Origin: Macrostomum lignano
Lineage: Eukaryota
Direction: 5' to 3'
DNA: 64,000 bases
Assembly: GCA_002269645.1 (NCBI GenBank)
Contig: NIVC01000646.1
Coordinates: 310,001-374,000, forward strand
Shown: positions 2,003-60,087 of the stretch, in pieces
How the letters are laid out: each line of letters begins with the position of its first letter
Numbering within the stretch: position 1 is the stretch's first letter
Position numbers and translations under genes: made by a program
Notes under the pieces: model-generated
Databases searched by the model: none
Told to the model about the DNA's origin: nothing
Seen by the model: only the letters and a program-made list of their open reading frames with translations

Positions 2003-2989
2003 GTGAGGGTTCGCCATCATGCACTTCATGCTGCAAAATTGCATTTAATGAGAAACTGAAGCTCATTTGATAGAAATTTGCCTCACCCCATGCAGCTGGC
2101 TAAAGTTTATAAACACAATCAAATAATCAATTACCGCGTGGGCGTTGAAGAAAATTTCATAACTATGGAAATCTTTAATTAATTTTTAATTATAGCGCAA
2201 GGCAGGAAAATGTACATGCCTTAATCTGCTGGCATCCCCATTGCTTTTCTGCTTATCTTTCTATCCCGTTGCCACAAATAAATATTCCCAGTTAACTGGC
2301 TCTCCCGGGTGGGCCGGGATGAGGCAGCCGCTGCTATGCCGGTAAAGCTGTCCAGAGCGTTGAGGGTCGACCCGAACCCTCCAATTCAATGTTATGCATA
2401 ATCTGTCTGCGGGGGGGGGTTGCCAGCCCATTGTGCAGCTGACATGGACACAGAATCTGCAGTACAGACATATGAGATGGTGCTGAATGCTCAGCCAATA
2501 ACTATTATTTATTTTGAAACTAAAAGGGCTGCGAGAACTCCATATGGATTTCAGCAATGTAAAACTCTTGAGTGATAGGAATATTAATATTTGAAGCACT
2601 AAGAAATTAAAAAGCATTTTGTGACATCCGGTCGAGAATTGCCTCCCCAGGTATTCCGAATTCAGAGGTTCCACGACCTGCCGCTCTGCCACTTCCTCAT
2701 TGTGCTCAGGAAATCCTCATTGCATTCCGCTGCTCATTTCTGCAACTCTATTTGCCCCTTCCGGAGTACAAGTGCACTGTAAAGATCCATTCTCTATTAT
2801 GGAGGGCCGCGGGGCATGAGATGCAGGCTGGGATCTGAGAGTTGTTACAGTCTGTGACCAAGCCCTTTCTCATCGATCAGCAGAGCAAACTAATTATCCG
2901 CGGACCCTATTGTTTCAGCTGCAAACAATTTATTGGGAAAATCTGCTATTTTCATTGTGTCGCAGCAGGAATCTGATTTCTGACCGTCT

Positions 2990-3925
2990 CTTCACCTCTG
3001 TTCCCTCTCTTCACCCTCTGTTCCCTCTCTACCATCTGTTCCCTCTCTTCACCCTCTGTTCCCTCTCTACCATCTGTTCCCTCTCTTCACCCTCTGTTCC
3101 CTCTCTACCATCTGTTCCCTCTCTTCACCCTCTGTTCCCTCTCTACCATCTGTTCCCTCTCTTCACCCTCTGTTCCCTCTCTATCATCTGTTCCCTCTCT
3201 TCACCCTCTGTTCCCTCTCTACCATCTGTTCCCTCTCTTCACCCTCTGTTCCCTCTCTATCATCTGTTCCCTCTCTTCACCCTCTGTTCCCTCTCTGCCA
3301 TCTGTTCCCTCTCTTCACCCTCTGTTCCCTCTCTTCACCTCTCTGCCTTCCCTCTCTTCACCCTCTGTTCCCTCTCTTTACCCTCTGTTCCCTCTCCTTA
3401 CCCTCTCTGCCTTCCCTCTCTTCACCCTCTGTTCCCTCTCTTTACCCTCTCTGCCTTCTCTCTCTTTACCCTCTGTTCCCTCTCTTCACCCTCTGTTTCC
3501 TCTCTTTACCCTCTGTTCCCTCTCCTTACCCTCTCTGCCTTCTCTCTCTTCACCTCTGTTCCCTCTCTTTACCCTCTGTTCCCTCTCTTCACCCTATGTT
3601 CCCTCTCTTTACCCTCTCTGCCTTCTCTCTCTTTACCCTCTGTTCCCTCTCTTCACCCTCTGTTCCCTCTCTTTACCATCTGTTCCCTCTCTTTACCCTC
3701 TGTTCCCTCTCTTTACCCTCTGTTCCCTCTCTTTACCCTCTCTGCCTTCTCTCTCTTCACCCTCTGTTCCCTCTCTTCACCCTCTGTTCCCTCTCTTCAC
3801 CCTCTGTTCCCTCTCTTTACCATCTGTTCCCTCTCTTCACCCTCTGTTCCCTCTCTTTACCCTCTCTGCCTTCTCTCTCTTTACCCTCTGTTCCCTCTCT
3901 TTACCCTCTGTTTCCTCTGTCTTCA
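2990..3925. repeat. Pyrimidine-rich ~20-21-bp minisatellite (CTGTTCCCTCTCTTCACCCT-like) in the last Islet intron
   Basis: Tandem units are visible; the array ends about 70 nt before the acceptor at 3995. Confidence 0.95.
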
Positions 3926-3995
3926 CCCCACCATCTCCATCATTGCCTCCCGCTAGTCCAATTCAACATCCACCACCATCCGCCCTCCTCCTCAG

Positions 3996-4343
3996 CGAAC
4001 TCTAAACGGCGTCCCGATGATCGCCTCCTCGCCTGTCCGCCACGACCCGGGTGCTCAGCCGGTCGATGTCATCACCTCTTCTCAGCAGTCGGCTTTTGGC
4101 GGTCCGCCGCCGCCACCGCCGCTGCTGCAGCCGCTGCCGCCCCTGCCGCCACCGCCGCCACCGCCGCCGCCTCCGCCGTCACACTGGGCTCAGCCGCTGG
4201 ACTCGTCAGTGCCACAGCCGCCGCCATTTCAACAGCTGGTGTCGGCCTACAGCAGCCTCTACGGCTCGGAAGATGAAGCGGAAGAGGACGACTCCTGCGT
4301 CACTCTGTCAGCTGACGGCTGCCACCTGTACACCCCCCGATAG
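3996..4343 (+). CDS. isl1: Islet terminal exon with the Lhx3/4-binding-type motif and a poly-Pro tract
   Basis: Acceptor CTCCTCCTCAG (ends 3995) is phase 0, matching the donor at 2003. Reads RTLNGVPMIASSPVRHDPGAQPVDV...PFQQLVS, matching the Islet GTPMVAASPERHD...NPVEV...FQQLV motifs. Stop TAG at 4341-4343. Confidence 0.88.
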   Translation, partial: RTLNGVPMIASSPVRHDPGAQPVDVITSSQQSAFGGPPPPPPLLQPLPPLPPPPPPPPPPPSHWAQPLDSSVPQPPPFQQLVSAYSSLYGSEDEAEEDDSCVTLSADGCHLYTPR

Positions 4344-5392: not shown

Positions 5393-5666
5393 AAGGTCAG
5401 GGGTTCGATTCTCCATCCAGTCGTAACAATTTGTGTCCTTGAGCAAGACACTCAACTCTACATTGCTTCAGTTCACCTAGCTGTAAAATGGGTGCCAGCA
5501 TTAGCTGGGGTAATTGAGGGTGTGTGTGGCGACCCCCCAGTCCTTGGACTGAACAGCCGTACGCAGCCTTCAGATGCGCCGCTCAATAGCTGCGGCTGAG
5601 CTGTCGGTTGCACATCTGGCCCAATTGGGGCAGGTGTAATCAATTGTTATCATAATTATTATTATT
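5393..5666 (+). mobile_element. tRNA-derived CORE-like SINE, 5'-truncated copy
   Basis: Near-identical to the copies at 6669, 22015, 27886 and 50628. Has B-box GGTTCGATTC, core TGTGTCCTTGAGCAAGACAC...CTGTAAAATGGG and an (ATT)n tail. Confidence 0.9.
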
Positions 5667-6668
5667 GTGCTAAAAACCAATGTTACAGGGGACACGAAGT
5701 ACAGCGGCCGTGGCTCTCTAATCGTCAGGCATGCACCCCACACTGGTGCCTTGGGAGTTGACCCTCTTACTCATGATCGCGTATGGCCATACACGATTCG
5801 AACCCGGGGGGGGGGCTCTTTGAACTTACCGCTTCTCTCTCCAGTGTTCTCTGTCCTGCTTTCTGGGGTGAAAATCAAAAGACAGAACTATTGGAGTTCG
5901 CCTAAAGCAATCCAACAGATTACGGAACCAAAGCGGCCCACGAAAAGCAGCCGGCGAGCCCATAGATACTACTGGGCGGTGAGCGTCAGTTGTCCATCAG
6001 CTCCCCTTGTTGGACCTCCTTGAGGCAACAGCAGCGGCTGCTGGTGCAGACCGAGCCTGGCCCGATTATCGCATCAAATTTAATTGTCCCCAGGGCTGCC
6101 GATGTCAGCTGGCGGGGTCAAGCCGGTGGCAATCCGGCCGCGAATGCGGCACAGTGGCGGCAGGCGGCAGCAGCGAAGCCCCTATAGCGGTGCAGCGAGA
6201 ATTATTCGCCAACTGTTGTTGCTCCGCCAGCGAAGCCAGATTAATCCCCGGGATAGGGGAGAAAAACTTGCGTGGCGGGGGGGGGGCTCTGTACCGAGCG
6301 GGATCTGGGATCTTTTATACATATATATATATATGAATTCCCCCCGGCCAAAATCCCGCTGCTAAGGTCTTCTTCTTCTAGGGGTGCTAGGCCGGAGGGG
6401 ATTCCCTGCTGCTTCTAGTATAGTATTTTGTAAGAAATCAATGTAGCTCGCTCGATTAATTATGTGACAATTATGCCAGCAAGAATGATGGCAACAATGT
6501 GCTGAAATTATTTATGGAGGGTATTTTAACGCAGTAACTTGCAGGTGTTACCAGTTTACAACAATCTGGTCTCTCTCTCAAAGCACCGAGCTGATGGACC
6601 TTTGGCTCGGCCCCTTGTTGAGCTTAAAAACCGGATGCATAAATGTTACCCACTCTTACATTGGCAAA

Positions 6669-6891
6669 GGGGGTTGCAAGCCTAGTGGTCAGAGCGTCGG
6701 ACTCACGACTTGAAGGTCGGGGGTTCGATTCTCGACCCACCGGAACAATTTGTGTCCTTGAGCAAGACACATAACTCTGAATTGCTTCAGTTCACCCCGC
6801 TGTAAAATGGGTGCCAGCATTAGCTGGGGTAATTGAGGGTGTGTGTGGCGACCCCCCAGTCCTTGGACTGAACAGCCGTACGCAGCCTTCA
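6669..6891 (+). mobile_element. tRNA-derived CORE-like SINE, 3'-truncated copy
   Basis: Head GGGGGTTGCAAGCCTAGTGGTCAGAGCG (A box) ... GGTTCGATTC (B box) plus the core; stops before the tail. Confidence 0.9.
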
Positions 6892-11768: not shown

Positions 11769-12192
11769 GTGACCCCAATAGCACAGTGACCCCAATAGCA
11801 CAGTGACCCCAATAGCACAGTGACCCCAATAGCACAGTGACCCCAATAGCACAGTGACCCCAATAGCACAGTGACCCCAATAGCACAGTGACCCCAATAG
11901 CACAGTGACCCCAATAGCACAGTGACCCCAATAGCACAGTGACCCCAATAGCACAGTGACCCCAATAGCACAGTGACCCCAATAGCACAGTGACCCCAAT
12001 AGCACAGTGACCCCAATAGCACAGTGACCCCAATAGCACAGTGACCCCAATAGCACAGTGACCCCAATAGCACAGTGACCCCAATAGCACAGTGACCCCA
12101 ATAGCACAGTGACCCCAATAGCACAGTGACCCCAATAGCACAGTGACCCCAATAGCACAGTGACCCCAATAGCACAGTGACCCCAATAGCAC
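11769..12192. repeat. 17-bp minisatellite (GTGACCCCAATAGCACA), about 25 homogeneous units
   Basis: Directly visible; abuts the 15-bp array. Confidence 0.96.
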
Positions 12193-12689
12193 AAAAACTG
12201 CAATATTATGTAAACTGTCCTTTCTGTTCACCTCGGCCGCTGTCTCATGAATATTCATCAGCTACAGGAGCCTCGCCTCCTTAACCCCGCAAGGCTATTT
12301 AGGCTGCCGCAAAAAATCGATGCAGCAACTCCACCCAGCAAAACTGCTGGCACAGCTTAATAGTGAATCGATAGCGATTTTCCAAAGACAATTTCACCCC
12401 ATATTGCAAACTAGGGGGAGCTGCTTGAAGAACCCCAAAGCTGATTGACTGAGGTTTTCAAGCTTACAAACCGCGGACCAAAACCCGGATGCATTACAGA
12501 GTCGCTTTGTTGATCCAAGATGAGTGACATTCGGTGGCTGGTGTGTTCGAAAGCTATCGAATGCTGCATGTAAATATAGCATGGAAACTATGTCATACTG
12601 TGGGCATTCGGTTAAGAAAACATTCCGAACATTTTATTGACAGTCTGCAGATGTGCGAAAAATGATCGCAAGTTTTTTGCTGATTGGCT

Positions 12690-14376
<1,687 letters not shown>

Positions 14377-15305: not shown

Positions 15306-18300
15306 ATGCAAAACTGGCTGCATCCAGCCGACCTCTTGAGGCTGCTGGTACTAACTGTGAGCCTCTTCAGCGGCTGCCCGGTCCTTGAAGCGTCCACCAG
15401 TAACGTTACGTTCCACGTGGAGGAGAACGGACCACAGCCGCTGCAGCTGGTCGGCTCTGTGCAGTCCGGCGGTTGCCAGGCTCCCTTCAACTCGTTCAAC
15501 ATCCCGAATGAGGCGCTCAGCCTGGACCGGGAATCCGGCAATGTGCGGACGCAGACCAGGCTGGACAGAGAGCTGCAAGCGGCCTACACCTTCGACGTAA
15601 TCTGCAGCACCTCCATCGTCCACGTGCTTGTTGTCGTAGACGACAAGAATGACTGCTATCCGACTTTCCAGAATGCCACCCTGGTCTTGCACCGGCCGGA
15701 GAACATTCCAACTCCGACGGCGCTGCCGCTAATGTACGTCGAAGACCTGGATTCGGAGCCGAACTCCATCGACAGGGTGGAGATCACAGCCGGAAATGCT
15801 GACAATCGCTTTGCGGTGCAGCAGCGACAGCAGGTGGGCCGGCCGACCCGCTTCGACTTGGTGTTGGTGCTACAGACACCGCTGGACTACGAGTCAGCCA
15901 GCTCGTACAGCCTTCAACTGACGGCCTACGACAAGCGGGGCTTGACTGGCACGGCCAATGTTGTACTCAACGTTAACAACGTGAACGATGAGAGTCCGGT
16001 GTTTACGCAGTCTTTATATCAGGTGAACGTCACCGAGAATACCACAATTGGTACAGAAGTAATCCAGGTGCGAGCCAACGATCGCGACCTGGGCGAGTTC
16101 AACACCGTGCGCTACTACATCAATAACGAAGTGTCGGACCCGGACCGCCACTTTGCGATGGACCCGGTGACAGGAAGCATTCGTCTGGCCAAGACACTGG
16201 ACTACGAGTTGCGTCAGTTGTACTCCATCGTAGTCGTGGCCACGGACGGCGTCAACAATGGCTCAGCCAATGTGGTCGTCCGAGTTATCGATGTCAACGA
16301 TAGACCACCGCAGGTTACGCTGTTAAACCTGACCACAGGAGGCCAGGTTCTTCAGAGCGCGGTGATCGGCCAGCCGGTAATGCGGATAGAGGTAACAGAC
16401 CCGGACAGGCCGCTGGACCCGGTGCAAGTAGTCCTATCCATGAGCACTTTTGAGTTCAAGCTGACCGCCTTAGATAAGAACATATTCGTAATCCAAGTCA
16501 ACTCTAGCCTGAGCCCGCAGCTCTACATCATGACCCTAACGGCTATTGACTCGGGCGATCCGCCCCTGACAACTACAGTCAGCATCGGCATCCAGGTGCT
16601 GGCTAGCAACGATCACGCGCCAGAGTTTACGAAAGTAAATTATCACGCAACAGTGGGCTCGAGCACCTCGTCTGGATTTCAAGTAGTTCAAGTCCAGGCC
16701 GCTGATCCTGACCGGACGACTGTCAGCTATTCGATGACACCGGCTTCCGCATCGGATGCTGGCTTCTTCGACATCAACTTGGCGACAGGCTGGATAACGG
16801 TGGGCTCCAAGCGGTTAGTTTGCGGTTCATTCGCCATGCAAATCCACGCTGCTGACAGCGGCTCGCCGCCACGAGTGAGCAACGCCACTCTAGTTGTATT
16901 CGTCACCGACAGCAATCAGTATTGGCCGCGATTCCAGAAGCCTTTTTATTCGGTCACTTTGCCGAAAGCTGGCGTGACGTCCTGCTTTTCGCAAGTTCAT
17001 GCCACTGATCGCGACTGCGGAGCCGCCTTGAGCTACTCGTTCTCGGAGAACGTGAGCTCAGCCTACGGCTCGCTATTCACATCGACCTACTCTGTGGACA
17101 GCTACACCGGTTACATCTGCGTGTCCAATGCCTCAAACGCTCTGGCCTTTGGCAACCTGATACAGCTACCAATCAGAGTTTTAGATTCCGCAGCGGGTGT
17201 GGCCAAGGCGAGCTACTCTCTGTTCCAGCTGAGCATATCAGATATCGGCCCAAGCGCTCCAAACAGATTCCCGCTGACGAACTATCGAATTGACCTGAGT
17301 GAGAGCTATCCAACAAACGTGGCCATATTGTCAGTAGCGGCCATCGGTGGGGCGGATTACTCGCTAGTCAGCTCCAGCAGCTACTTCACTATGTTCGGCA
17401 ATGGCACACTGGCACTTGCGAGCTCACTGGACTATGAAACTGGGCCCAGAGCGTTCTCTCTTACGATTGTCAGCGGTGCGAGTCTTTCAGCTAATCTGAT
17501 AATTAGTGTGAGCGTCCTGGATGAGAACGACAATTATCCGAACTGCTCAGTCGTGGAGAAGAGCCTAGCAGTGGCTGATAACTCTCCCCAAAGCACACAA
17601 ATCATCCAGTTTGCCTGTACAGATCCGGACACGGGGCCCGGCCTGGTATACACAGCCGACTTCGACAACTTTGCCGTGAGCAGCGGCGGTTCGCTGACCG
17701 TGAAGAATAGCATCACTCACCTGGCTGGACAGACGGTGACTCTGCCTGTGAAGGTCTGTGATCCAGACATGCAGTGCGTGAACTTCACGACCAGCGTGCG
17801 AGTTATCGACACCAACGATCACTCACCGGAGTTCTCCCAACCGGCTGGCTACTGGTTCAGGACGCCCGAAAATGTTTCTCCAGGGACCGCCTTGGGAACA
17901 GTGCTGGCTACGGACATGGACCTGGGTCTCAATGCGGCGGTGAAATATCGACTGATCGATCCCAGCGGCAGTTTTACCATCGGAGAGTTAAGCGGTACGT
18001 TAAAAACGTCGGCTCCACTCGATCGGGAAACTTTGAGCTCGTACTCACTTAAGGTCGAAGCCTACGATGTAGGATCTCCGAGTCGAACTGCAACTGTCCA
18101 GGTAGCAGTCATAGTTACTGACGTCAACGATGTTGCACCGAAATTTCGACTCAAAAGCTACGCCGTGTCCGCCACTGATCAAACACCTGCTGCGGCCAGT
18201 CTTCTAGTAGTGGACGCAACCGACCCCGACCTTGGACTCGGAGCAACTCTCAGCTTCAGTCTCAGCGGCCCTGTGTCCGAATATTTGTCCGTGAATAGGG

Positions 18301-20763
18301 TTACAGGGGTCTTGTCAACTGTAAAGCGTCTGACGCCGGGTCATTGGATCGGTCTGCTGACTGTAAGCGATGGTGGCGACTTAACTGACACTTCCCAGTT
18401 ATCCCTGACCATCTCACGAGTGCCCGTCTGGCCCAACAGTTCTGTGCTCATGACGGCTAGCGAGTCAGCCAAAGTTGGTCACCTTGTTGGTCAAATCAAA
18501 GCTCCATCGACAAAGGCGTATTATACGTTGCAAGCGGCAGCGGATGGAGCTTTTTGGGTGTCTGTGAACTCTGGAAAGATCTACGTGAACCGACCTTTAG
18601 ACAGAGAAGCTGTCTCGGTTCACACGTACGAAATATTGGTTACCGACGCCACAGAGAGAGCCCCCGGCCGGCCTCAGTCTTCAACTGTCTCCCTAACCAT
18701 CTCTATACTGGACGAGAATGACAACGCACCGAGAATTGGTGACGAAGACTTGTCTCCAACAATCAGCGTAGCAGAAGACCTGCCCGGTGGCTCACTGATT
18801 CACACCTTCTCTGTAACTGATCCAGACCTAGGCTTGAACGGAACAATCGCGTATTTTTTAGCTGAGCCAACGGCACTCTTTGCGATCGATGAAAAGGCTG
18901 GAAAGCTCGTCATACTGCAGTCGCTAGATCGGGAGACACTCGGTGAAGCAACGCAAATAGGAGTTTTTGTGACCGATAGATGTCAAACTGTTCCTCTTTG
19001 CTCAAAAACTAGAGCAGTAATCGTCACCATAGTTATTAAGGATGTAAACGACCATGCTCCTAGTCTGTCATTCGATACCGGCGCTTTCTATCTTTCCACA
19101 GATAAAGCTGGTGCGATAATTTCCCATGTTGAAGGCGTCGATAATGACCCGGGGTTAAATGGCACCCTATCGTTCAGCGTCAGTCCCGCTGACGCGGTAG
19201 CTATAGACGAGTTCGGTCTGGTGCGGCTGCTAGCCGCTGGAACAGCGACAGTCGCAGTGAACGCGTCCGCAACAGACAGTGGCCCGCTGAGCTCGCGTCA
19301 AACAAATTGGCGCTCAACCGACATTCCCTTCGTGAGCTTCGGAGGCGCTGACAAGCCAAAGTTCCAGCAGTCTATTTACAGTACAAGTATTAGCTCGCGA
19401 GCTGCTCAGGGCCAGGATGTGGTCTTGCTAGACGCTCAGAAACGAGTAGGATCGCTGGAATTCCGCCTACCCTATGGCCTCTATGACAATTTGTTTTCGA
19501 TTGATCCGGTCATTGGCCAGGTACGACTGGCCCGGCCGCTTCCCGATGACTATCGGCTTACCTACCGGCTGACCGGCCTCCTGGCTGACAAGGCAAGCCG
19601 CCCCAGCCGTCTTGGCACCACCGAAGTTGCCGTGAATTTGGTGGACGCAAACGAGCACGCGCCGGTGTTTCTCAGCGCCTACTACACGGATGTGCCGGAG
19701 GGCCAGGCGTACTCCGGCCTGCTCACTTTGGCTGCCTACGATCTGGACCGCGGACCGGCAGGCGAAGTCACGTACGCCATCGAGGGCAGCGGTGGGCTGC
19801 AGTTCATTCTGGATCCAAAGAGCGGCGAGCTCTCCTGCTCAGCGCTGGACTCCTCAGCAGCCAGCCAGTATCTGCTGAATGTGACAGCCACAGACGGCGG
19901 AGGCCTTGTTGGCCGCACCACTGTGACTGTCCGGGTGCTCCCAGTGAATCGATTTGCTCCGACATTCCAACGCGGCCTCTACACGACCGCTGTGTCCGAG
20001 AACGCCCCAGTTGGCGCCTCGGTGCTGAATGTAACCGCAACGGATCGTGACGCTGGCGTTAATGGCCGAGTGACCTACTCCCTGCTGGGCAAGCCCGACA
20101 CTGTCGGCATCGACCCGGACACTGGGGAGATCCGACTGGCGCGGCGTCTGGACAAGGAGCTGGAGTCGTTCGTGTCAGCATCTGTGATCGCCACCGACTA
20201 CAGCCAGGAGAATCCAATGTCTTCCATGGTCAACGTCGAAATCGAAGTGCTCGACGCCAATGACGAGCGACCGGTGTTCCAGACTGCTTATTACTATTAC
20301 CAAGTCAGCGCCCCTCTCGCACCTGGCGCCCTGCTGACGACCCTCAGAGCAACCGACGCGGACAGCTCGCCGGTGAACAGCGCCGTGAAGTACAGCATCG
20401 AGTCCAACGACTTGCTGTCGGTGGACGAAACTTCCGGTCGGGTTACGCTGCTGCGCAGCCTCGCCGCATCGCCCGCTTCAGTCAGCTTCCACTCGTTCGA
20501 AGTGCGGGCCAGAGACACTGGACTGCCGGCACCTCTGACCTCGGTCACTCGGCTTGTTGTGCAGCTGGGCTCCCCGAGTCCGGCTCTCGCATTCGCCTAC
20601 GTCAATTACTCGGCCGCGCTGCCGGAGAACTCGCCAGCTGGAGCCTGTCCGCTCAGCGACGCCACGGCCGCTTGCCTGACGGTGTCGACTGTCCCGCCGG
20701 CCAGCCGGTACGCCATCGTGGCCGGCAATGAGGAGGGAAGATTTGCAATCAATCCATTGACAG
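15306..20763 (+). CDS. ds: Dachsous-type protocadherin, coding exon 1 (signal peptide plus about 17 cadherin repeats)
   Basis: 5.46-kb open frame with a hydrophobic N-terminus and repeated LDRE/LDYE, DxNDNxP and AxDxG cadherin motifs. Phase-1 donor ACAG|GTAAGA at 20763/20764. Confidence 0.93.
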
Positions 20764-22014
20764 GTAAGAGTCCGGCTGGTTTTGTTCCACCCTACATGTA
20801 GTTGGCTACAGCAGTTCTCATGAGTGACCCTCGAGACCGCATACACCAACTCGGGTTCGGAATCGAACCCGAGTAGTTTGGTGTGTTACTCACCCTCCAC
20901 ATCTAGTTCCTATATTCCCATCTCAGCATCGCATAAAAGAGAGCCTTCTTGTGAAGTTTGATAATCTCTTTATAAACTGTGGATTTCTCATTGCTATTCC
21001 CGTCCCACCCAGCATCAGCCCATGGACGCTGCATCAATGCACTGCTCGGCACTCCCGTTAATCTCTCAAGCCTTACTCATTTAGTGGCCTTACCTGACCC
21101 TAAAAGCGGCAAAGCTGAGGTGTGCTCAACACTGAGTTTGCTGATGCAGGCCCATTAGAAGGGGCAAGAGATTGAGTGAGAGCACAGTGCTCAAGGCTCA
21201 GCGATCAAAGCAGGGACCTTAGGTAAGCCTTCTTCAATAAATCTCTCATTAAATAAGAGAAGAAACTAGAGTTACACTAAAAAGAAACGGACACAGAAGA
21301 AGAAGAAGAAGAAGCGACAGGATCAGGAGCTGCAGCCTCTTAAAGCTCTCTTCCTCTTCTTTCTCTCTACCTTATTTCCTCAGCTCTTCCCCTAATTTGG
21401 CTTGAATGGGTGGGGCGCCGACTCATATGGGGATTTGCACTTTTTGCTGTTTGGAACTGCTTTTGACAATCAGTGCTACAATCAATTCTCAATAGATTCT
21501 AGGTATCAAAGTGTACACTGACTGCGCCTGAGAAATATCTGTACTCAGATGTGCAGAGATGACAGAGAGCAGGTATTCTATAACGTGACACTAGAGCACT
21601 AGAGCAGGGTTTAGAATAGCGAAAAAACGGAGCAAAAAAGAATGCAGAGTCAGTGGAGTGTAAATTCTAAGCTCATTCTGAACTGGCGACAGAGGCGACA
21701 CATGCAATCCTAGAGAGCGACAGAGGTAGAGAGAGGCGAACTTTGCTAAATCTACTTTTGCAGTTGACTAGAAAATTGTCTTGTTAAACAAGGCTGCCTT
21801 TGTGTGCCAGGCGGCGGAAAGGGCTGGGGGGGGGGTTGGCGCAGGCACTGCCGCAGTGCTGCAGCCGCTAAGTGGCTCATGCAGACCTTTCGGAGCCACA
21901 GACTCATTCTCGGTGTCCATAATTGCTTGTCTGCCATCTTTTTATGAAGTGAGATGAGTTTGACATGATAGGAACGTCTGGTCGATTGAGCCATCTTTGG
22001 ACCTGAGCACTGGA

Positions 22015-22319
22015 GGGGGTTGTAGCCTAGTGGTTAGAGCGTCGGACTCACGACTTGAAGGTTGAGGGTTCGATTCTCGACCCACTCGAAAAAAATTTGC
22101 GTCTTTGAGCAAGACACTTAACTCTGCATTGCTTCAGTTCACCCAGCTGTAAAATGGGTGCCAGCATTAGCTGGGGTAATTGAGGATGTGTGTGGCGACC
22201 CCCAGTCATTGGACTGAACAGCCGTCCGCAGCCTTCAGATGCGCCGCTCAATAGCTGCGGCTGAGCTGTCGGTTGCACATCTGGCCCAATTAGGGCAGGT
22301 GTAATCAATTATTATTATT
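22015..22319 (+). mobile_element. tRNA-derived CORE-like SINE, full length, in ds intron 1
   Basis: Complete head, core and (ATT)n tail; possible short TSD ACTGGA. Confidence 0.92.
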
Positions 22320-25328: not shown

Positions 25329-25592
25329 GTGCCATAACGGTGGCAACCACCAACGCGTCGGCCCTGGATTATGAAACCCGCCGCAGCCACCGGCTGGTCG
25401 TTCAGGCGTCCACCGCGCAGCAGGCAGCGCTGACTCGAGTCGACATCCGGTTGAGCAACCGGGACGACTGCGGGCCCCGCTTCGCCCAGCTGGTCTACGC
25501 CGCCGTTCTGCCCGAGAAATCGCCCGCGGGCGCACCAGTTGCTCGAGTCTGGGCCATCGACGATGACAGCCGGGTGAAATACCGCCTGCTGA

Positions 25593-25627
<35 letters not shown>

Positions 25628-26175
25628 AGCGGCTTCGCCATCAACGAAGACACCGGGCTGGTGACCGTGGCCACTCCGCCGGACTACAGTCTGCAGTCCA
25701 ACCATTCCTTGGCCGTGGTAGCCGCCTCCGAGGATGACCCGCTGATGACGGCCAAGTGCACTTTGCTGGTCCGCATCGTCAATCTGAACAACCAGAAGCC
25801 GCTGCTGCAACCGACTCCCGACCTGACCTTGGCCGCCGATGCCCGGCCCGGTCAGCGGCTGACCCAGATTCGAGCCACGGACCTCGACGGCTACCCTCCG
25901 CTGGCCTACAGCCTGGCCATCGAGCCGTCGACGCATTCAACGGTGTTCGCCATCGGCCGATTCTCCGGCGACCTCTGGCTGGTTGGCAAACCCGACCGGT
26001 CCGACTTCAACCTCAGCGTGACTGTCGTGGACGGTGGCGAACACTCGGCGTCTGGCAGCTTCCGCGTCCGACTCAACGCCTCGGCTGGCGGCGCCAAGTT
26101 CGTCCGCGGCTTGTTCTTCTTTGCTGCCAGGGTGGGCGCCTCGCTGACAGATCCGGTCGGCACTTTGGAGCTTGT

Positions 26176-26246
<71 letters not shown>

Positions 26247-26758
26247 TGTCCTTGTCGATTGTCGCCGATCCGACGCTGCCACAGCCGCCGCCGTTTCAGC
26301 TGGTCGGCTTGGAACTCCGGCCGAGCCGGGCCGTTCTCGAGGCCGCCGACTTTGCCTTCGTTGTCAAGGCGACGCTGCCGCTGTCGTCCGGATCGACGAC
26401 GACATCCGCCGACTTCGCCACGGTGCTGGTCAGCTATCAGGCCTCGAACTCGCGACCGCCGGCCTTCCGGAATGTCAGCGCCGCCACCGGCGACATCGTG
26501 CTGACGGTGTCGGAGGCGACGCCGATTGGTCGAGCTGTGGGCGTCGCAGTCTGCGTCGACGAGGACGCCGGCCAGACGACGTCAGTTGAGGTGGTCGCCG
26601 CGGCGGGCTCGGAGCCTCCGCCGGTGCAGGCGGTGCGGCACACGGGCCGGCTGGTGCTGACGAAGCGGTTGGACCGGGAGTCTCAGGCGGAGCACCGCTT
26701 CCAGGTGGCCTGCTGGGACAGCGGCCTGCCGAGCCTGGGTGTCAACGCCACCGTCAGG
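25329..26758 (+). CDS. ds: Dachsous-type protocadherin, coding exon 2 (cadherin repeats with two poly-Gly inserts)
   Basis: Acceptor CCCCCAG|G (25328) is phase 1 and gives INPLTG|AITVATTNASALDYE. Phase-0 donor AGG|GTGAGA at 26758/26759. Confidence 0.92.
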
Positions 26759-27324
26759 GTGAGAGAGGATTGAGATTGAGTTGGAGTCAGGATATAGATA
26801 GAGAGAGAGAGATGGGAGATGTAATGAAATTCAAAAAAGCCATTCAAAACGGTTTAAAAGTACAAAATTCAAATCCGCATATGCCCATAGTCATTGGATG
26901 GTATTTCCCTAAATCAACTGGCACAAAAGCACAAGTGCCAGCAAACAATAGAATGAATAAAAAGGACAGAGTTGGAATCTCTATAGAATTACTCATAGTT
27001 ATAGCTAATATAGTTCAGTCCTAATGCAGTTTTGCGGGTTCCAAAAGTGCCAACACAGGGAGGGACTGTCAGTGGCTCACTGCAGCATCCCTCACGTGTG
27101 TGCTCAGTACCCGCTGGGGTGAGCATGTTGGGAGAATCAAAAGAAGAGAATGAATTCTGCGTAGTCAGAGGGCCGCCGCTTGTGCCATTTATTGTGCGCG
27201 ACAAGCAGGAAGGGGGGAGCAAGAGGAGTGTCTGGTTGCCGGGCTGGGAAAGGACACTCAAGCCAGGCAAACTCTCCCCCTGCTGCTGTCAATCAGCTGA
27301 GGAGCGCGGCGCCGGGGGGGGGGG

Positions 27325-27695
27325 TTTCACTAGGCCGAAATTTCACTTCGCCGAAAGCATCTTCCTTCACAAGGCCGAAACTTCACTAGGCCGAAACTTC
27401 ACATTGCGGAAAAATCATTTTAGCAGCCTCTTTCACTAGGCCGAAACTTCACTAGGCCGAAACTTCACTAGGCCGAAACTTCACTTTGCCAAAATGATTA
27501 GCACGCTCTTTCATAAGGCCGAAACTTCACTAGGCCGAAACTTCACTAGGCCGAAACTTCACTTTGCCAAAATGATTAGCACGCTCTTTCATAAGGCCGA
27601 AACTTCACTAGGCCGAAACTTCACTAGGCCGAAACTTCACTTTGCCAAAATGATTAGCACGCTCTTTCATAAGGCCGAAACTTCACATTGCCGAA
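27325..27695. repeat. Tandem/nested repeat of CACTAGGCCGAAACTT with a triplicated ~67-bp block; possibly a solo foldback-type arm
   Basis: Repeats are visible. No inverted partner or TSD was found in the window. Confidence 0.8.
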
Positions 27696-27885
27696 AAACC
27701 ATTTTAACCATTTAAACCAAATTAAAGTTTCTCGTTTATAACTTAGTTTCAGCCGCTCTTCAGTTGCTTGAGCTGTCAAGATGATTTTGACACAAGTTTT
27801 TAAATGTAATTTTGAGATTATACCGACGAAAATTTTATTTACAAATTGACTGCAATTGATGGTATCTACCACCGGTTAGTATTCG

Positions 27886-28183
27886 ATAATAATAAATAAT
27901 AATTGATTACACCTGCCCTAATGGCCAGATGTGCAACCGACAGCTCAGCCGCAGCTATTGTGCGGCGCATCTGAAGGCTGCGTACGGCTGTTCAGTCCAA
28001 GGACTGGGGGGTCGCTACACACACTCAATTACCCCAGCTAATGCTGGCACCAATTTTACAGCTGGATGAACTGAAGCAATGCAGAGTTGAGTGTCTTGCT
28101 CAAGGACACAAATTGGTCCAGTGGATCGAGAATCGAACCCCCGACCTTCAAGTTCGACGCTCTAACCACTAGGCTAAACCCCC
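27886..28183 (-). mobile_element. tRNA-derived CORE-like SINE, full length, antisense in ds intron 2
   Basis: Reverse complement of the other copies; head CCCCC at 28179-28183, tail at about 27886-27905. Confidence 0.92.
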
Positions 28184-28186
28184 TAG

Positions 28187-28260
28187 GCCTTAAAAACGGT
28201 CTCTTACTGTGAAGAGCCAATTTAATATTAGAGCAACAGTAAAGGTCACGAAAATTTCGC
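28187..28260 (+). ncRNA. Spliced-leader (SL) RNA-like sequence (variant or pseudogene) in ds intron 2
   Basis: GCCTTAAAAACGGTCTCTTACTGTGAAGAGCCAATTTA closely resembles the Macrostomum SL exon as I recall it (GCCGTAAAGACGGTCTCTTACTGCGAAGACTCAATTTATTGCATG; recalled, not verified). Hairpin GG(T)CTCTT/AAGAGCC is present. The terminal ATG and a canonical Sm site are not evident. Confidence 0.55.
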
Positions 28261-28312
28261 TCATCATGCTAATTAAAGTAGTCACAGGCTGATTTTCTCA
28301 CTGAACCCGCAG

Positions 28313-30163
28313 GTTTTGGTGCAGGACGCCAACGACAATGCGCCGAAGTTCGTTGGCGATCCCTACGCAACCAGCCTCGTCGCGTCCACCGCGGCCGCCT
28401 CCGTTGGATCTCGCCTCCTGACGGTGGCCGCGAACGACCCAGACGTTGGCATCAACGGTCAGGTGACCTACCGGTTGCTTGGCAACGGGACGCTGCTCGG
28501 CGTAGATTCCGCAAGCGGGGGAGTGTCGCTACTTTCGACTCCGCCGGAGGTTCAGATCGACGCATCTGACAGCGCCGCCGGCTTTGTCGGCTTCGAATTC
28601 CTCGTCCGCGCTTCCGACGTCCGGCTGTCCAGCCTCGCCCGCCTCAGTCTTCGGGTTCTCACCGACGCTGCGGCTTCTGCGCCGTCGCTACCGGCGAACC
28701 CGCTGGCTCTGCTGGTGAGCGAAGGCCTCGCAGCCGGGTCACTGGTCAGCGACAAACTGCCGACCGACTGCGCAGTTGAGCCGGCCAGTCCGGAGTTCGA
28801 ACTCAAATCGGGTCGCTTGACAACGCTGAGGATGCTCGACTACGAGAACACGACTGCCTACAGCCTGCGGCTCAACTGCAGCGCTGGCGCGGAGAGGCAG
28901 CAGCTGCTGATGCTGGTGCAGGATGTCGACGAGTTCCAACCGGTCTTCGACCTGGCCGAGTACCGGCTGAACCTGGCATCCACACCACCAATCGGACAGT
29001 CGCTAATTCGTCTGGCCGCCTCGGACAGGGACGCCGGGTCGGCCGGCCGGGTTGCTTTCTCGCTGACTGGCGTGGACTGCGACGCCGACAGCGAAGCGGC
29101 TGCCGGACGGTTCAGCGTGAACACCAGCACGGGCGAAGTTTACCTGGCGCGAGCTTTCAATGCGGCGGCAGCTGATGACACGGTGCTGGCGAACTACAGC
29201 CTCCGAGTGCGTGCCAGCAGCGTGGCTCTGTTCACCGACGCAGTCGTCCAGCTGACCATGCCAGTGCCGCTGGAGATGAAGCCACCCTCGACAGGCCTTG
29301 CCACTCCACCGCTGGCTGCCATCCTCGCAGGCCTCTTCGTCTTGGTTGCTATCATTGTCGTCGCGGTAGTCGTGGCAGTCTGCGTGCATCGCCGCCGGCA
29401 ACTGGCTGGAAAGCGCGGTCTGCATTCGAGTCGAGCCAAGAGAAGGGAGGCAGCGGCCGCGGCAGGAGCCGCAAACTCAGCATCGCCCAATTCCACGCTG
29501 TACGACTCGTGCTTCGACCAGAACGTGGCCGCTGTCGTTGCCGCGGCGGCCGCCGGACTCCAACCGCCGAGGCCGCCGCCGAGGACAATGACGGAGTTGA
29601 CTCGACTGAGCGGCACCGCGCACAGCTCCGGACTTGGCAGCGCCGCGTCAGACGAAGACCATCAATCGCAGCAGCTGCATCACCACCAGCAGCAGCAACA
29701 GCAGCCGCTGAATTTCATATCGACAGGACAGACTGACGGAGCCTCCTTGCCTAAGGACCATCGAGAGTATCTGCACCGGCTTGGCGTGACCCCGGAGCTG
29801 CGACCGTCGCCTCTGAGCGCTGGCGCCGGCAGGCGATTCCACTCCGCGGCCAGCCTGTGGAGCGAGGATCCGTACCAAGCCACCCCGGTGCCCAGCCTGC
29901 TGGAGCTGCCGCGGGCTGCCGCTGGTGCCGCTGGCTTCGGTGGCTCCAACGGCGTCAGCGGAGTCGGCGGCTTCCCCGTCGGGCTGAACACGGCTCAGCC
30001 CCGGCTGCCGTCGCACCTGACAGCCTGGCAGCCGCAGTTCCAGCCGTTGGCCAGCGTCTTCGCCGAGATCGCGCAGTTGAAAGACGACGCCAACGCTGAT
30101 GGAGGCTTTGTGGGACTCTACGATGTACACGACGAGACCGCATTTTCAACCTCCGTGATTTGA
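28313..30163 (+). CDS. ds: Dachsous-type protocadherin, coding exon 3 (last cadherin repeats, TM helix, cytoplasmic tail)
   Basis: Acceptor CCCGCAG|GTT is phase 0 (VNATVR|VLVQDANDNAP). TM segment LAAILAGLFVLVAIIVVAVVVAVCV. The tail carries SSGLGSA and WQPQFQPLASVFAEIAQLKD, matching the Dachsous/DCHS cytoplasmic motifs. The spliced CDS is 8739 nt, 2912 aa. Confidence 0.93.
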   Translation, partial: VLVQDANDNAPKFVGDPYATSLVASTAAASVGSRLLTVAANDPDVGINGQVTYRLLGNGTLLGVDSASGGVSLLSTPPEVQIDASDSAAGFVGFEFLVRASDVRLSSLARLSLRVLTDAAASAPSLPANPLALLVSEGLAAGSLVSDKLPTDCAVEPASPEFELKSGRLTTLRMLDYENTTAYSLRLNCSAGAERQQLLMLVQDVDEFQPVFDLAEYRLNLASTPPIGQSLIRLAASDRDAGSAGRVAFSLTGVDCDADSEAAAGRFSVNTSTGEVYLARAFNAAAADDTVLANYSLRVRASSVALFTDAVVQLTMPVPLEMKPPSTGLATPPLAAILAGLFVLVAIIVVAVVVAVCVHRRRQLAGKRGLHSSRAKRREAAAAAGAANSASPNSTLYDSCFDQNVAAVVAAAAAGLQPPRPPPRTMTELTRLSGTAHSSGLGSAASDEDHQSQQLHHHQQQQQQPLNFISTGQTDGASLPKDHREYLHRLGVTPELRPSPLSAGAGRRFHSAASLWSEDPYQATPVPSLLELPRAAAGAAGFGGSNGVSGVGGFPVGLNTAQPRLPSHLTAWQPQFQPLASVFAEIAQLKDDANADGGFVGLYDVHDETAFSTSVI

Positions 30164-40220: not shown

Positions 40221-40273
40221 GAGCTTGTTGCCACCCAAACTCACGTGACCAAGAGATCCTATCAGTTCCCTCG

Positions 40274-42100
40274 GGATGCACGACAATTGACTGCCACAAT
40301 TTGACTGCCGACAAAATGACTGCGAACAAAATGACTGCGGACAAAATGACTGCGGACAAAATGACTGCGGACAAAATGACTGCGGACAAAATGACTGCCG
40401 ACAAAATGACTGCGAACAAAATGACTGCGGACAAAATGACTGCGGACAAAATGACTGCGGACAAAATGACTGCCGACAAAATGACTGCGAACAAAATGAC
40501 TGCGGACAAAATGACTGCGGACAAAATGACTGCGAACAAAATGACTGCGGACAAAATGACTGCCGACAAAATGACTGCCGACAATTTGACTGCGGACAAA
40601 ATGACTGCCAACAAAATGACTGCCGACAAAATGACTGCGGAAATTTGACTGCCGACAATATGACTGCGGCAATTTGACTGCCGACAATATGACTGCGAAC
40701 AAAATGACTGCGGACAAAATGACTGCGGACAAAATGACTGCCGACAAAATGACTGCCGACAATTTGACTGCCGTCAAAATGACTGCCAACAAAATGACTG
40801 CCGACAAAATGACTGCCAACAAAATGACTGCCGACAAAATGACTGCGGCAATTTGACTGCCGAGCAATTTGACTGCCGACAAAATGACAGCGGCAAAGCT
40901 TGCTAGGCGCATTCTCGTTATGCAAAAGAGGAGAGAGATAAGAGAGAAGTTGAAAAAGAAGACAGGGGAAAGGAGAGATTGTAGAGATGAGAGAGATGAA
41001 AGGAGAGATGAGAGATGAGAGATGAAGGCGGAGAGAGCAGAGTGCAGAGAGACGAGAGAAGTGAATAAAGGGGAGAGAGTATAGAAGAGGGAAAAGAAGA
41101 GGACTAAGGAAAGAGAGGAGTCAGAAGAGGGGAAAGAGTGAAGTGACAGGTACACAGGAGTGAAGAGTAAAGATGAGAGGGGGATGAGAGAGCAAAGATG
41201 AGAGTCAGAGAGTGAACACGATATATGAGAGGAGAGAGGAGAGCGCAGAGAGAGAAGAGAAAAGACAAGAGAGGGAGAGACTATAGAAGAAAGAAGAGAA
41301 GAAAAGAAAAGGCAAGAAAGGAGAAAGGAAAGAGAGGAGTCAAAAGAGGGGAAAGAGAAGAGTACAGAGGAGAGAGGTGAGAGAACATACCAGTATAAGA
41401 GAGTAAAGATGACAGATGAGAGAGGGGAGATGAGAGAGCAGAGACGAGAGAGAAGTGAGAAAACAGAAGAGAAGATAGAAGGTTCAAAGGATGCAAGGGA
41501 CATAGGGATCGAGAGGCAGAAGTAGAGGCCAGAGTTTTTCTGACATTCTGCGCCGCACCCCAGCCAACAATATCAATAGTTTGCCTCCAATCCTAATTTT
41601 ACACGAATGTAATCTATGTTATGTTTAACTCTAATAATAAAAGTTTTTGCTTGAGTTTAACTTTAGATTTTAGAATATATGCAGTTCCTAAGATTGGAAT
41701 TCCTATTTCCCACTGTTCAAAATCCGCGGGTTTCAACAGCTGTTACAGCTTGTTGTATAAAGGTAGTGTTCTGTTCTGCATCATTCTAGCTCGTAAATAC
41801 AATATTTCACTACATGCATAGACTTAAAAGGGTTGACAGAGTGCTAAACTTTAGGAGCATCATTTTTCCGGCAGTCATTTCGCTGGCAGTCAATTGCTCG
41901 GCAGTCAAATTGCCGCAGTCATATTGTCGGCAGTCAAATTGCCGCAGTCATATTGTCGGCAGTCAAATTTCCGCAGTCATTTTGTCCGCAGTCAAATTGT
42001 CGGCAGTCATTTTGTCGGCAGTCATTTATTTTGTCGGCAGTCAAATTGACCGCAGTCAAATTGTGGCAGTCAAATTGTGGCAGTCAATTGTCGTAGACCC
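40274..42100. mobile_element. Non-autonomous foldback/Mutator-like element with arms built of 15-bp tandem repeats
   Basis: Arms GG(A/G)T(G/C)(C/T)ACGACAATTGACTGCCACAATTTGACTGC then (GACAAAATGACTGCS)n, inverted at 40274-40895 and about 41865-42100. 9-bp TSD GTTCCCTCG / GTTTCCTCG (1 mismatch). GA-rich filler at about 40925-41520. Confidence 0.87.
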
Positions 42101-50627: not shown

Positions 50628-50931
50628 GGGGGTTGTAGCCTAGTGGTTAGAGCGTCGGACTCACAACTTGAAGGTTGTGGGTTCGATTCCCAATCCCACT
50701 GGAACAATTTGTGTCCTTGAGCAAGACACTCAACTCTGCATTGCTTCAGTTCATCTAGCTGTAAAATGGGTGCCAGCATTCAATGGGGTAATTAAGGGTG
50801 TGTGGCGACCCCCCAGTTCTTGGACTGAACAGCCGTACATAGCCTTCAGATGCGCCGCGCAATAGCTGCGGCTGAGCGGTCGGTTGCACATGTGCCCAAT
50901 AGGGCAGGTGTGATCAGTAATCAATTATTAT
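50628..50931 (+). mobile_element. tRNA-derived CORE-like SINE, full length
   Basis: Same family as the other copies; shows CpG-to-CpA changes relative to them. Confidence 0.92.
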
Positions 50932-53993: not shown

Positions 53994-54822
53994 TAGTGTC
54001 TGTCTGTCTTAGTGTCTGTCTTAGTGTCTGTCTGTCTTAGTGTCTGTGTTAGTGTCTATCTTAGTGTCTGTCTTAGTGTCTGTGTTAGTGTCTATCTTAG
54101 TGTCTGTGTTAGTGTCCGTCTCTCTGTCTTAGTGTCTCTCTTAGTGTCTGTCTTAGTGTCTCTCTTAGTGTCTGTCTTAGTGTCTGTCTTAGTGTCTGTG
54201 TTAGTGTCCGTCTCTCTGTCTTAGTGTCGCTCTTAGTGTCTGTCTTAGTGTCTCTCTGTCTTAGTGTCTCTCTTAGTGTCTGTCTTAGTGTCTGTCTTAG
54301 TGTCCGTCTCTCTGTCTTAGTGTCTCTCTTAGTGTCTGTCTTAGTGTCTCTCTTAGTGTCTGTCTTAGTGTCTGTCTTAGTGTCTGTGTTAGTGTCCGTC
54401 TCTCTGTCTTAGTGTCGCTCTTAGTGTCTGTCTTAGTGTCTCTCTGTCTTAGTGTCTCTCTTAGTGTCTGTCTTAGTGTCTCTCTTAGTGTCTGTCTTAG
54501 TGTCTCTCTTAGTGTCTGTCTTAGTGTCTCTCTTAGTGTCTGTCTTAGTGTCTGTCTTAGTGTCTGTCTTAGTGTCTGTCTTAGTGTCTGTCTTAGTGTC
54601 TGTCTTAGTGTCTGTCTTAGTGTCTGTCTTAGTGTCTGTCTTAGTGTCTGCCTTAGTGTCTCTCTTAGTGTCTGTCTTAGTGTCTGTGTTAGTGTCCGTC
54701 TGTCTGTCTTAGTGTCTGTCTGTCTTAGTGTCTGTGTTAGTGTCCGTCTGTCTGTCTTAGTGTCTGTCTGTCTGCCTGCCTGCCTGCCTGTCTATCTGCC
54801 TGCCTGTCTGTCTGTCTGTCTT
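53815..54822. repeat. 12-bp repeat (TTAGTGTCTGTC)n grading into (TCTG)n/(CCTG)n
   Basis: Directly visible. Confidence 0.95.
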
Positions 54823-55187: not shown

Positions 55188-55219
55188 GTGAGTCGCTCGT
55201 CATGTGTACTGTTGACTGA

Positions 55220-60084: not shown

Positions 60085-60087
60085 GCC

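What the first reader, a model, noticed from the sequence alone, without database searches (positions are those of the whole stretch)
28187..28312. Spliced-leader-RNA-like sequence hidden in a Dachsous intron, 3 nt from a SINE head and about 75-125 nt upstream of the 3' splice site
Seen: GCCTTAAAAACGGTCTCTTACTGTGAAGAGCCAATTTAATATTAGAG on the sense strand, with a stem GG(T)CTCTT-loop-AAGAGCC, then candidate donors CA|GTAAAG (28239) and AAG|GTCACG (28245), and a weak Sm-like AAAATTTCG. From recall, unverified: the Macrostomum SL exon is GCCGTAAAGACGGTCTCTTACTGCGAAGACTCAATTTATTGCATG, which would give 33 of the first 38 positions identical, with the differences leaving a hairpin intact and the terminal ATG lost. 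Inference, three options: (a) a variant SL or SL-like snRNA; (b) an SL pseudogene whose promoter was displaced by the SINE; (c) an SL-like mini-exon that cis-splices to ds exon 3, mimicking trans-splicing and yielding a short Ds isoform.
Basis: partly seen in the sequence, partly recalled or inferred. Interest (0 to 1): 0.72.

Follow-up and report, generated by a model that had tools for sequence, protein, structure and literature searches.

The report
Dead spliced-leader fragment in an intron
A 38-base stretch in an intron of a flatworm Dachsous-type cadherin gene is a real but decayed copy of the start of the Macrostomum spliced leader; it lacks every other part of a spliced-leader RNA gene, so it is most likely an inert relic of a kind already known in flatworm genomes.

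Summary
Window 28187-28224 matches nt 1-38 of the published 45-nt Macrostomum spliced leader (SL) at 33 of 38 positions. It is unique in the window and far beyond chance. It lies on the sense strand of the last intron (26759-28312) of a Dachsous/protocadherin-16-type gene, 3 nt from the head of a minus-strand tRNA-derived SINE.

The "SL RNA" reading fails. Homology stops abruptly at leader nt 38, and the terminal AUG is gone. GTAAAG and GTCACG do not fit the Macrostomum donor consensus GT[G/A]AG. I recovered two genuine SL RNA genes from public contigs. Their leaders are 45/45 identical and their intron halves 55/65 identical, yet they show no similarity to 28225-28312.

A covariance model built from one true gene gives 143 and 111 bits for the true genes, 19-22 bits for leader-only mRNAs, and 9 bits for this element. 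The true gene folds with z = -3.3; this element folds with z = +0.7. The fragment (13% diverged) looks older than the adjacent SINE copy (2.7%).

Best reading: a non-functional SL-leader relic. Expression and orthologous introns could not be checked. Interest is low.

The parts
28187..28224 (+). SL-leader-derived fragment: homologue of nt 1-38 of the 45-nt Macrostomum spliced leader, 33/38 identical
   Evidence: Every comparison (two SL genes and two trans-spliced mRNAs) ends at 28224.
28225..28312 (+). Remaining 3' end of the intron, with no detectable SL RNA homology.
27886..28183 (-). tRNA-derived SINE copy (copy A), about 300 nt with an (ATT)n-type tail. Its head abuts the SL fragment, 3 nt away and in the opposite orientation.
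   Evidence: Four other copies lie at 22014-22319, 5393-5662, 50628-50931 and 6668-6891 (all +). None carries the SL-like sequence.
26759..28312 (+). Phase-0 intron between coding exons 2 and 3 of the Dachsous-type cadherin gene (GTGAGA...CCCGCAG)
28313..30163 (+). Last coding exon of the cadherin gene: final cadherin repeats, transmembrane segment, cytoplasmic tail and stop codon
27826..27835 (+). Left copy of the 10-nt direct repeat ACGAAAATTT. It brackets a 412-nt block made of 50 nt, the SINE, TAG, the SL fragment and 23 nt.
   Evidence: 2% of shuffles. Possibly a target-site duplication; unresolved.
28248..28257 (+). Right copy of the 10-nt direct repeat ACGAAAATTT.

Best explanation
The element is a non-functional relic of the first 38 nt of the Macrostomum spliced leader, lying in the last intron of a Dachsous-type cadherin gene. 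It is transcribed only passively, as part of the pre-mRNA, and is removed with the intron. Shown: the homology, its sharp limits (SL nt 1 to nt 38), and the absence of the other defining parts of an SL RNA gene. Inferred: because homology begins at the first nucleotide of the SL RNA, the piece probably entered as cDNA of an SL-bearing RNA (SL RNA or a trans-spliced transcript) captured in the intron, and was then truncated or broken at nt 38. It accumulated about 13% substitutions. A young SINE copy inserted 3 nt upstream later. Alternatively, the two arrived together in a 412-nt block.
For: Homology is 33/38 and far beyond chance. The canonical leader is invariant in M. lignano, M. cliftonense and M. 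hystrix and in four environmental sequences, L001-L004. This copy, with five differences, is therefore a diverged derivative and not the species' working SL. The host is a Macrostomum relative: its Ds is 58% identical to M. lignano A0A1I8GRF3, and L003 shares its SINE family. Homology ends at nt 38 in every comparison. Under the 13% divergence of nt 1-38, having 5 or more of 7 mismatches in nt 39-45 has P = 7e-4, so this is a breakpoint and not decay. The rest of the element, compared with the intron halves of two true SL genes, is no better than shuffles (P = 0.1-0.6), although those halves are 55/65 identical to each other. Covariance model R1 gives 142.8 and 110.8 bits for the true genes, 22.3 and 19.5 bits for leader-only mRNAs, and 9.4 bits (E about 1) here. 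The true gene folds at -33.4 kcal/mol with z -3.3 and its donor paired in stem I; this element folds at -18.1 kcal/mol with z +0.67. Its first 61 nt give z 0.0, against -1.7 for the true gene. GTAAAG and GTCACG do not fit GT[G/A]AG. SINE copy A is 2.7% from its consensus against 13% for the fragment (Fisher P = 0.009). There is precedent. Parasitic flatworm genomes hold 597 loci whose only SL feature is a partial leader, next to mobile elements (PMC12582326). In M. lignano, a sequence once taken for the SL RNA maps to the 5' end of a coding gene (PMC8629364).
Against: No RNA data and no genome of this species or its relatives could be searched, so expression, copy number and conservation in orthologous introns are untested. 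The exact start at SL nt 1 would also fit a gene copy cut off from its promoter. The adjacent changes C30G and T31C lengthen a local hairpin. CAGUAA at 28237-28242 can pair with the leader's UUACUG, as the real donor pairs with UCUUAC; this is direct reading of the sequence, and the predicted fold does not use this pairing. The leader piece is the second-best complement of this intron's own 5' splice site (-17.3 kcal/mol). No poly(A) tail or clean target-site duplication marks a retro-insertion of the fragment itself. The age comparison rests on 38 nt and on a consensus built from only five SINE copies.
Confidence: 0.8

Rival explanations
1. It is a functional variant SL RNA or SL-like snRNA gene, with a longer leader lacking AUG, a GTAAAG donor at 28239 and a divergent 3' half.
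For: There is leader homology from nt 1 and a local hairpin. GTAAAG is preceded by CA, and CAGUAA can pair with the leader's UUACUG (read directly from the sequence). U-rich stretches lie at 28251-28259 and 28291-28297.
Against: No similarity to the SL intron half, which is conserved between the two true genes. The covariance-model score is 9.4 bits, below leader-only mRNAs. The fold z is +0.67. The donor is off-consensus. AAAATTTCG is a palindrome that overlaps a direct repeat. The GAUUUUCUC stretch is the pyrimidine tract of the Ds acceptor. A reversed SINE occupies positions -3 to -300, where a promoter would be. No variant leader was found among the few environmental Macrostomum sequences.
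Confidence: 0.03
2. It is a whole SL RNA gene copied as DNA and decayed in place, with its promoter separated by the SINE insertion.
For: Homology starts at the transcription start, immediately next to the SINE head. With ad hoc gaps, TT, GCA and GTAA(A)G can be lined up with TTGCATG|GTAAG (direct reading).
Against: Uniform decay at 13% would leave about 87% identity across the other 71 nt, but these are at shuffle level. The jump at nt 38/39 has P = 7e-4. Nothing left of the SINE resembles SL-gene upstream DNA, though that test is weak.
Confidence: 0.1
3. It is an SL-like mini-exon cis-spliced to the last Ds exon, giving a short isoform that mimics a trans-spliced mRNA.
For: The orientation is right, and GT dinucleotides lie 68-74 nt upstream of a proven acceptor.
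Against: Both donors miss GT[G/A]AG. The mini-exon has no ATG. The first in-frame Met of exon 3 is about 170 codons in, and the product would lack a signal peptide. No promoter is evident, and upstream lies a reversed SINE.
Confidence: 0.03
4. The SL fragment and the SINE arrived together, as one 412-nt composite retro-insertion read on the minus strand and bracketed by the 10-nt duplication ACGAAAATTT. The juxtaposition would then have been made at another locus.
For: The 10-nt direct repeat at 27826-27835 and 28248-28257 appears in only 2% of shuffles. SINE copy A has no duplication of its own of 5 nt or more next to its head, whereas copy B has ACTGGA. The minus-strand 3' end is ...GTAAATA followed by AAATTTT.
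Against: P = 0.02 was obtained after looking for repeats, so it is only suggestive. The two parts differ in divergence (13% against 2.7%). No second copy of the block exists in the window. This changes the origin but not the verdict that the fragment is inert.
Confidence: 0.12
5. The resemblance to the spliced leader is due to chance.
For: None beyond the short length.
Against: Zero of 100 shuffles match. BLAST E is 4e-7. The binomial estimate is about 6e-8 for the window and about 5e-4 even for 1e9 placements.
Confidence: 0.01

Closest known systems
Macrostomum SL RNA gene (109 nt; Ustyantsev & Berezikov 2021, PMC8629364). Examples recovered here: L003:615-723 and L004:1589-1697.
   Same: The first 38 nt are homologous (33/38), starting at the first nucleotide of the RNA and in the sense orientation.
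   Different: It lacks leader nt 39-45 with the AUG. It lacks the GTAAG donor paired in stem I, stem-loop II (TGATCCA...TGGATCA), the AUUUUUAG Sm-like site and stem-loop III (AGCCC...GGGCT). It has no fold stability and a covariance-model score of 9 bits against 111-143 bits.
Partial-leader loci in parasitic flatworm genomes (Calvelo et al. 2025, PMC12582326). There are 597 loci next to LTR or LINE elements, read as integrated cDNAs of trans-spliced retroelement transcripts.
   Same: The only SL RNA feature is a partial leader, and a mobile element is immediately adjacent.
   Different: Here the neighbour is a SINE in the opposite orientation, lying upstream of the leader. The leader is therefore not the 5' cap of that element's transcript. 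The part missing from the leader is its 3' end. The host is a free-living macrostomid.
Relict spliced leaders of dinoflagellate retrogenes (Slamovits & Keeling 2008, as cited in PMC12582326; also PMC5585692 and PMC6050394).
   Same: Genome-encoded SL remnants left by reverse transcription of SL-bearing RNA.
   Different: Dinoflagellate relicts sit directly at the 5' end of a retro-copied coding sequence and are typically trimmed at their 5' end. Here there is no retrogene body, the trimming is at the 3' end, and the site is intronic.
Genome-encoded SL at the 5' end of M. lignano gene Mlig013257.g1, the sequence first mistaken for the SL RNA (PMC8629364).
   Same: An SL sequence in a Macrostomum genome that is not an SL RNA gene and does not fold like one.
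   Different: That copy lies at the 5' end of a coding gene. This one lies inside an intron, is diverged and is truncated.
Truncated snRNA retro-pseudogenes of animals (from general knowledge, not tested here).
   Same: They are short copies that start at the RNA's first nucleotide, are cut short at the 3' end and are scattered in introns.
   Different: The classic examples end in an A-rich tract and have flanking direct repeats. Neither is clear here.

Membership tests
SL RNA gene (flatworm / Macrostomum type) | Leader sequence homologous to the species' spliced leader | tested here: met
   33/38 over nt 1-38 only. Nt 39-45 are not homologous.
SL RNA gene (flatworm / Macrostomum type) | [quoted passage not shown] | tested here: not met
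   The sequence after nt 38 is ATATTAGAGCAACA. The nearest GTs are GTAAAG, 14 nt later, and GTCACG. Neither fits GT[G/A]AG.
SL RNA gene (flatworm / Macrostomum type) | Stem I in which the donor pairs with the leader, and a three-hairpin fold more stable than chance | tested here: not met
   True gene: -33.4 kcal/mol, z -3.3, donor paired. Window element: z +0.67 for 126 nt and z 0.0 for 61 nt.
SL RNA gene (flatworm / Macrostomum type) | Sm-type site between stem-loops II and III, with a conserved intron half | tested here: not met
   The two true genes share 55/65 in this half, including TATTTTTAGCAGCCC. The window element is at shuffle level. The covariance model gives 9.4 bits against 110.8-142.8 bits. 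AAAATTTCG is a palindrome and not RAU(n)GR.
SL RNA gene (flatworm / Macrostomum type) | Upstream promoter | tested here: inconclusive
   A reversed SINE fills positions -3 to -300. There is no similarity to L003 upstream DNA on the far side, but L003 and L004 upstream regions do not align with each other either.
SL RNA gene (flatworm / Macrostomum type) | Expressed small RNA with a trimethylguanosine cap, whose leader is found on mRNA 5' ends | not testable with these tools
   No reads or transcriptome of this species were reachable. No near-identical protein exists in the collection.
Rfam SL families | Match to a curated SL covariance model | tested here: inconclusive
   No match. The genuine Macrostomum SL gene also matches nothing in Rfam, so the negative result says nothing.
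Partial-leader / relict-SL loci (retro-integrated SL-bearing RNA) | Leader homology as the only SL RNA feature | tested here: met
Partial-leader / relict-SL loci (retro-integrated SL-bearing RNA) | Leader joined in sense to a retro-copied transcript or mobile element, with tail and target-site duplication | tested here: inconclusive
   The adjacent SINE is upstream and inverted. The 88 nt downstream are unique in the window and have no poly(A). The only candidate duplication is the 10-nt repeat around a larger block.

The most novel reading that the evidence does not exclude
The fragment is not inert. One possibility is that it is the first exon, or the leader, of a rarely used variant SL-like transcript that joins to the last Ds exon and gives an N-terminally truncated, membrane-anchored Ds tail. 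The other is that the retained U1-like UCUCUUAC core of the leader acts inside the pre-mRNA. It would pair with the intron's own 5' splice site (GGUGAGAGA; -17.3 kcal/mol), bringing the donor to within about 100 nt of the acceptor across a 1.55-kb repeat-filled intron. That would be an SL stem-I mimic co-opted for cis-splicing.
Probability: 0.04. Interest if true: 0.6.

Novelty: new member of a known kind. Interest (0 to 1): 0.17.

Why it matters
As it stands, it matters little. It is one more genome-encoded spliced-leader remnant, showing that such relics also occur in free-living macrostomid flatworms and can lie inside introns of conserved genes. In practice it warns annotators that SL-seeded searches for SL RNA genes or trans-splice sites will pick up such fragments. 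It also gave two complete Macrostomum-type SL RNA genes from environmental contigs as yardsticks; one of them is filed under a bacterial MAG. If the fragment were expressed or conserved, it would bear on how trans-splicing parts are recycled into cis-splicing, but nothing here points that way.

Tried and rejected
- **Rfam:** at gathering and permissive thresholds it found no SL family. I rejected this as evidence because the genuine SL gene is also invisible to Rfam.
- **SL-like piece as part of the SINE:** rejected, because four other copies end at the same head position without it.
- **Template switching from the SINE RNA onto SL RNA:** rejected, because the two are head-to-head and not co-oriented.
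- **SL-gene promoter on the far side of the SINE:** nothing found, and the test has no power.
- **Orthologous or paralogous Ds loci and transcripts:** the collection holds no near-identical protein, and the M. lignano orthologue has no contig on record.
- **Scans for the leader with the three internal variable positions left free:** metagenome, bacterial-genome and viral collections returned only canonical leaders, so no variant family was seen.
- **Bacterial-type promoter and terminator scan:** irrelevant to a eukaryote and empty.
- **Pairing of the leader piece with the intron's 5' splice site:** a satellite unit in the same intron pairs better (-20.7 against -17.3 kcal/mol), so the complementarity is not special.

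Full report
**1. What is there**

The spliced leader it recalled is correct. Supplementary table 3 of PMC10468722 gives GCCGTAAAGACGGTCTCTTACTGCGAAGACTCAATTTATTGCATG for M. cliftonense and the same sequence, 2 nt shorter, for M. hystrix. PMC8629364 gives the same 35-nt core for M. lignano.

Local alignment gives 33/38 identities over SL nt 1-38. The differences are G4T, G9A, C24T, C30G and T31C. The match is unique in the window and absent from shuffles. BLAST E is 4e-7. A binomial estimate gives about 6e-8 for the whole window on both strands. The homology is therefore real.

**2. Setting**

Three long open blocks (15306-20801, 25340-26758, 28313-30163) are full of cadherin repeats. They are colinear with M. 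lignano A0A1I8GRF3 (P0016) at residues up to about 1806, then 1816-2243, then 2244-2752. The next-best relatives are protocadherin-16 and Dachsous.

The exon 2/3 junction ...ATVR|VLVQDANDNAP matches P0016 2243|2244. This fixes a phase-0 intron at 26759-28312 (GTGAGA...CCCGCAG). "Dachsous intron" and "exon 3" are therefore right.

Identity to M. lignano is only 58%, so the animal is a Macrostomum relative and not M. lignano. The intron holds, in order:
- a 78-nt satellite at 27365-27686;
- a tRNA-derived SINE on the minus strand at 27886-28183;
- the SL-like piece.

Four further SINE copies in the window all end at the same head position and none carries the SL-like sequence. The piece is therefore not part of the SINE. 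Exactly 3 nt (TAG) separate the two, head to head.

**3. Yardsticks**

A scan of metagenome contigs for the leader, with the three internal variant positions left free, returned three contigs. Two are mRNA-like, with the canonical leader at their 5' end (L001, L002). The third, L003, carries a complete SL RNA gene.

The same scan of bacterial genome contigs returned L004. This is a second complete SL RNA gene, on a contig filed under a Flavobacteriaceae MAG.

Both genes fit the published description. Each has a leader, a GTAAG donor, a hairpin, an AUUUUUAG Sm-like site and a second hairpin. Their leaders are 45/45 identical and their intron halves 55/65 identical. L003 folds at -33.4 kcal/mol, z -3.3, with the donor paired to the leader's UCUUAC. 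L003 also carries a diverged copy of the window's SINE family, which ties it to the same group of animals.

**4. Tests of the SL RNA reading**

- **Limits of homology.** Every comparison stops at 28224, which is leader nt 38. Under the 13% divergence of nt 1-38, seeing 5 or more of 7 mismatches in nt 39-45 has P = 7e-4. This is a breakpoint and not gradual decay.
- **Intron half.** The remaining 88 nt are no more similar to either true intron half than shuffles are (P = 0.1-0.6).
- **Covariance model.** Model R1, built from L003 with its structure, scores as follows:

| Sequence | Bits |
|---|---|
| L003, true SL gene | 142.8 |
| L004, true SL gene | 110.8 |
| L002, leader-only mRNA | 22.3 |
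| L001, leader-only mRNA | 19.5 |
| Window element | 9.4 (E about 1) |

- **Fold.** The element folds no better than shuffles: z +0.67 for 126 nt and z 0.0 for the first 61 nt.
- **Donors.** The Macrostomum donor consensus is GT[G/A]AG. GTAAAG and GTCACG both miss it.
- **Sm-like site.** AAAATTTCG is half of the palindrome CGAAAATTTCG and overlaps a direct repeat. The other U-run is the pyrimidine tract of the Ds acceptor.
- **Rfam.** It finds nothing here, but it also misses the true gene. That negative result carries no weight.

**5. Origin**

The canonical leader is invariant across three named species and four environmental sequences. The five differences therefore mark a diverged derivative.

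SINE copy A differs from its family consensus at 8 of 298 positions, against 5 of 38 for the fragment (Fisher P = 0.009). This suggests the fragment is older and the SINE landed next to it later. The consensus rests on only five copies, so the inference is soft.

Homology beginning at SL nt 1 favours an RNA-derived (cDNA) origin, but no tail or tight target-site duplication supports that. A search for SL-gene upstream DNA on the far side of the SINE found nothing. It had no power, because the two true genes' upstream regions do not align with each other.

A 10-nt direct repeat, ACGAAAATTT, lies at 27826-27835 and 28248-28257. It brackets a 412-nt block containing the SINE and the fragment, and it appears in 2% of shuffles. 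SINE copy A lacks a duplication of its own next to its head, whereas copy B has ACTGGA. A joint insertion of the block therefore remains possible. I could not resolve this without other genomic copies.

**6. What it does**

Most likely nothing (confidence 0.8). It is carried in the Ds pre-mRNA and discarded with the intron.

The mini-exon idea needs three things: a promoter where a reversed SINE lies, an off-consensus donor, and translation from a Met about 170 codons into exon 3 with no signal peptide.

The leader's U1-like core can pair with this intron's own 5' splice site at -17.3 kcal/mol. A satellite unit in the same intron pairs better, at -20.7 kcal/mol. Any SL leader is complementary to consensus donors by design, so this is inherited complementarity and not evidence of function.

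**7. Comparison with what is known**

Calvelo et al. (PMC12582326) set aside 597 loci in parasitic flatworm genomes whose only SL feature was a partial leader. These loci lay next to mobile elements, and the authors read them as integrated cDNAs of trans-spliced transcripts. Dinoflagellate relict leaders are the classic parallel. In M. lignano, a sequence once published as the SL RNA maps to the 5' end of a coding gene.

The present locus belongs to that kind. It differs in detail: its site is intronic, it is truncated at the 3' end, and its neighbouring SINE is inverted. It fails the membership test for an SL RNA gene on every structural feature that could be tested.

**8. Verdict**

The element is a new member of a known kind and of low interest.

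Still untested are expression, genomic copy number and orthologous introns. The decisive checks are listed under next steps.

Noticed in passing
L004:1589-1697 (JAGQZA010000190.1, filed as a Flavobacteriaceae MAG): A complete Macrostomum-type SL RNA gene (leader 45/45 identical, 110.8 bits with model R1) sits on a 3.75-kb contig of a bacterial metagenome-assembled genome. This is almost certainly flatworm DNA binned by mistake.
   Followed up: partly
L003:615-723 and L003:1-390: A complete SL RNA gene lies on a JGI metagenome contig, preceded by a (GGCA)n microsatellite and a diverged, 5'-truncated copy of the same SINE family as in the window. The upstream regions of L003 and L004 share no alignable promoter.
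   Followed up: partly
window 50629-50698 (+): The only Rfam gathering-level hit in the window (tRNA, 38.6 bits) is the head of SINE copy D (50628-50931) and not a free-standing tRNA gene. The family has at least five copies in 64 kb, at 5393-5662, 6668-6891, 22014-22319, 27886-28183(-) and 50628-50931.
   Followed up: partly
window 27365-27686: The same Ds intron holds a satellite of 4.1 copies of a 78-nt unit (95% matches), itself built of 16-nt CTTCACTAGGCCGAAA subrepeats. One unit is the best complement in the intron to the intron's own 5' splice site (-20.7 kcal/mol).
   Followed up: partly
window 27826-27835 and 28248-28257: A 10-nt direct repeat, ACGAAAATTT, brackets a 412-nt block holding the SINE and the SL fragment. 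It appears in 2% of shuffles. It may be the target-site duplication of a composite insertion.
   Followed up: partly
window 25340-26758 (Ds exon 2): Two long poly-glycine runs (about 11 and about 20 Gly) lie in the extracellular cadherin region and are absent from the M. lignano orthologue. They are probably expanded GGN repeats.
   Followed up: no
window 40262-41503 (-): A 413-aa open reading frame matches pentapeptide-repeat families (PF13599, E = 5e-12). It may be a real gene or a translated simple repeat in a strongly skewed region.
   Followed up: no
window 2001-4000, 12001-14000, 54001-60000: These stretches have extreme GC or AT skew (down to -0.63 and -0.56), which points to long strand-biased simple repeats. 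L003's (GGCA)n aligns to 60083-60308 and 54761-54818.
   Followed up: no
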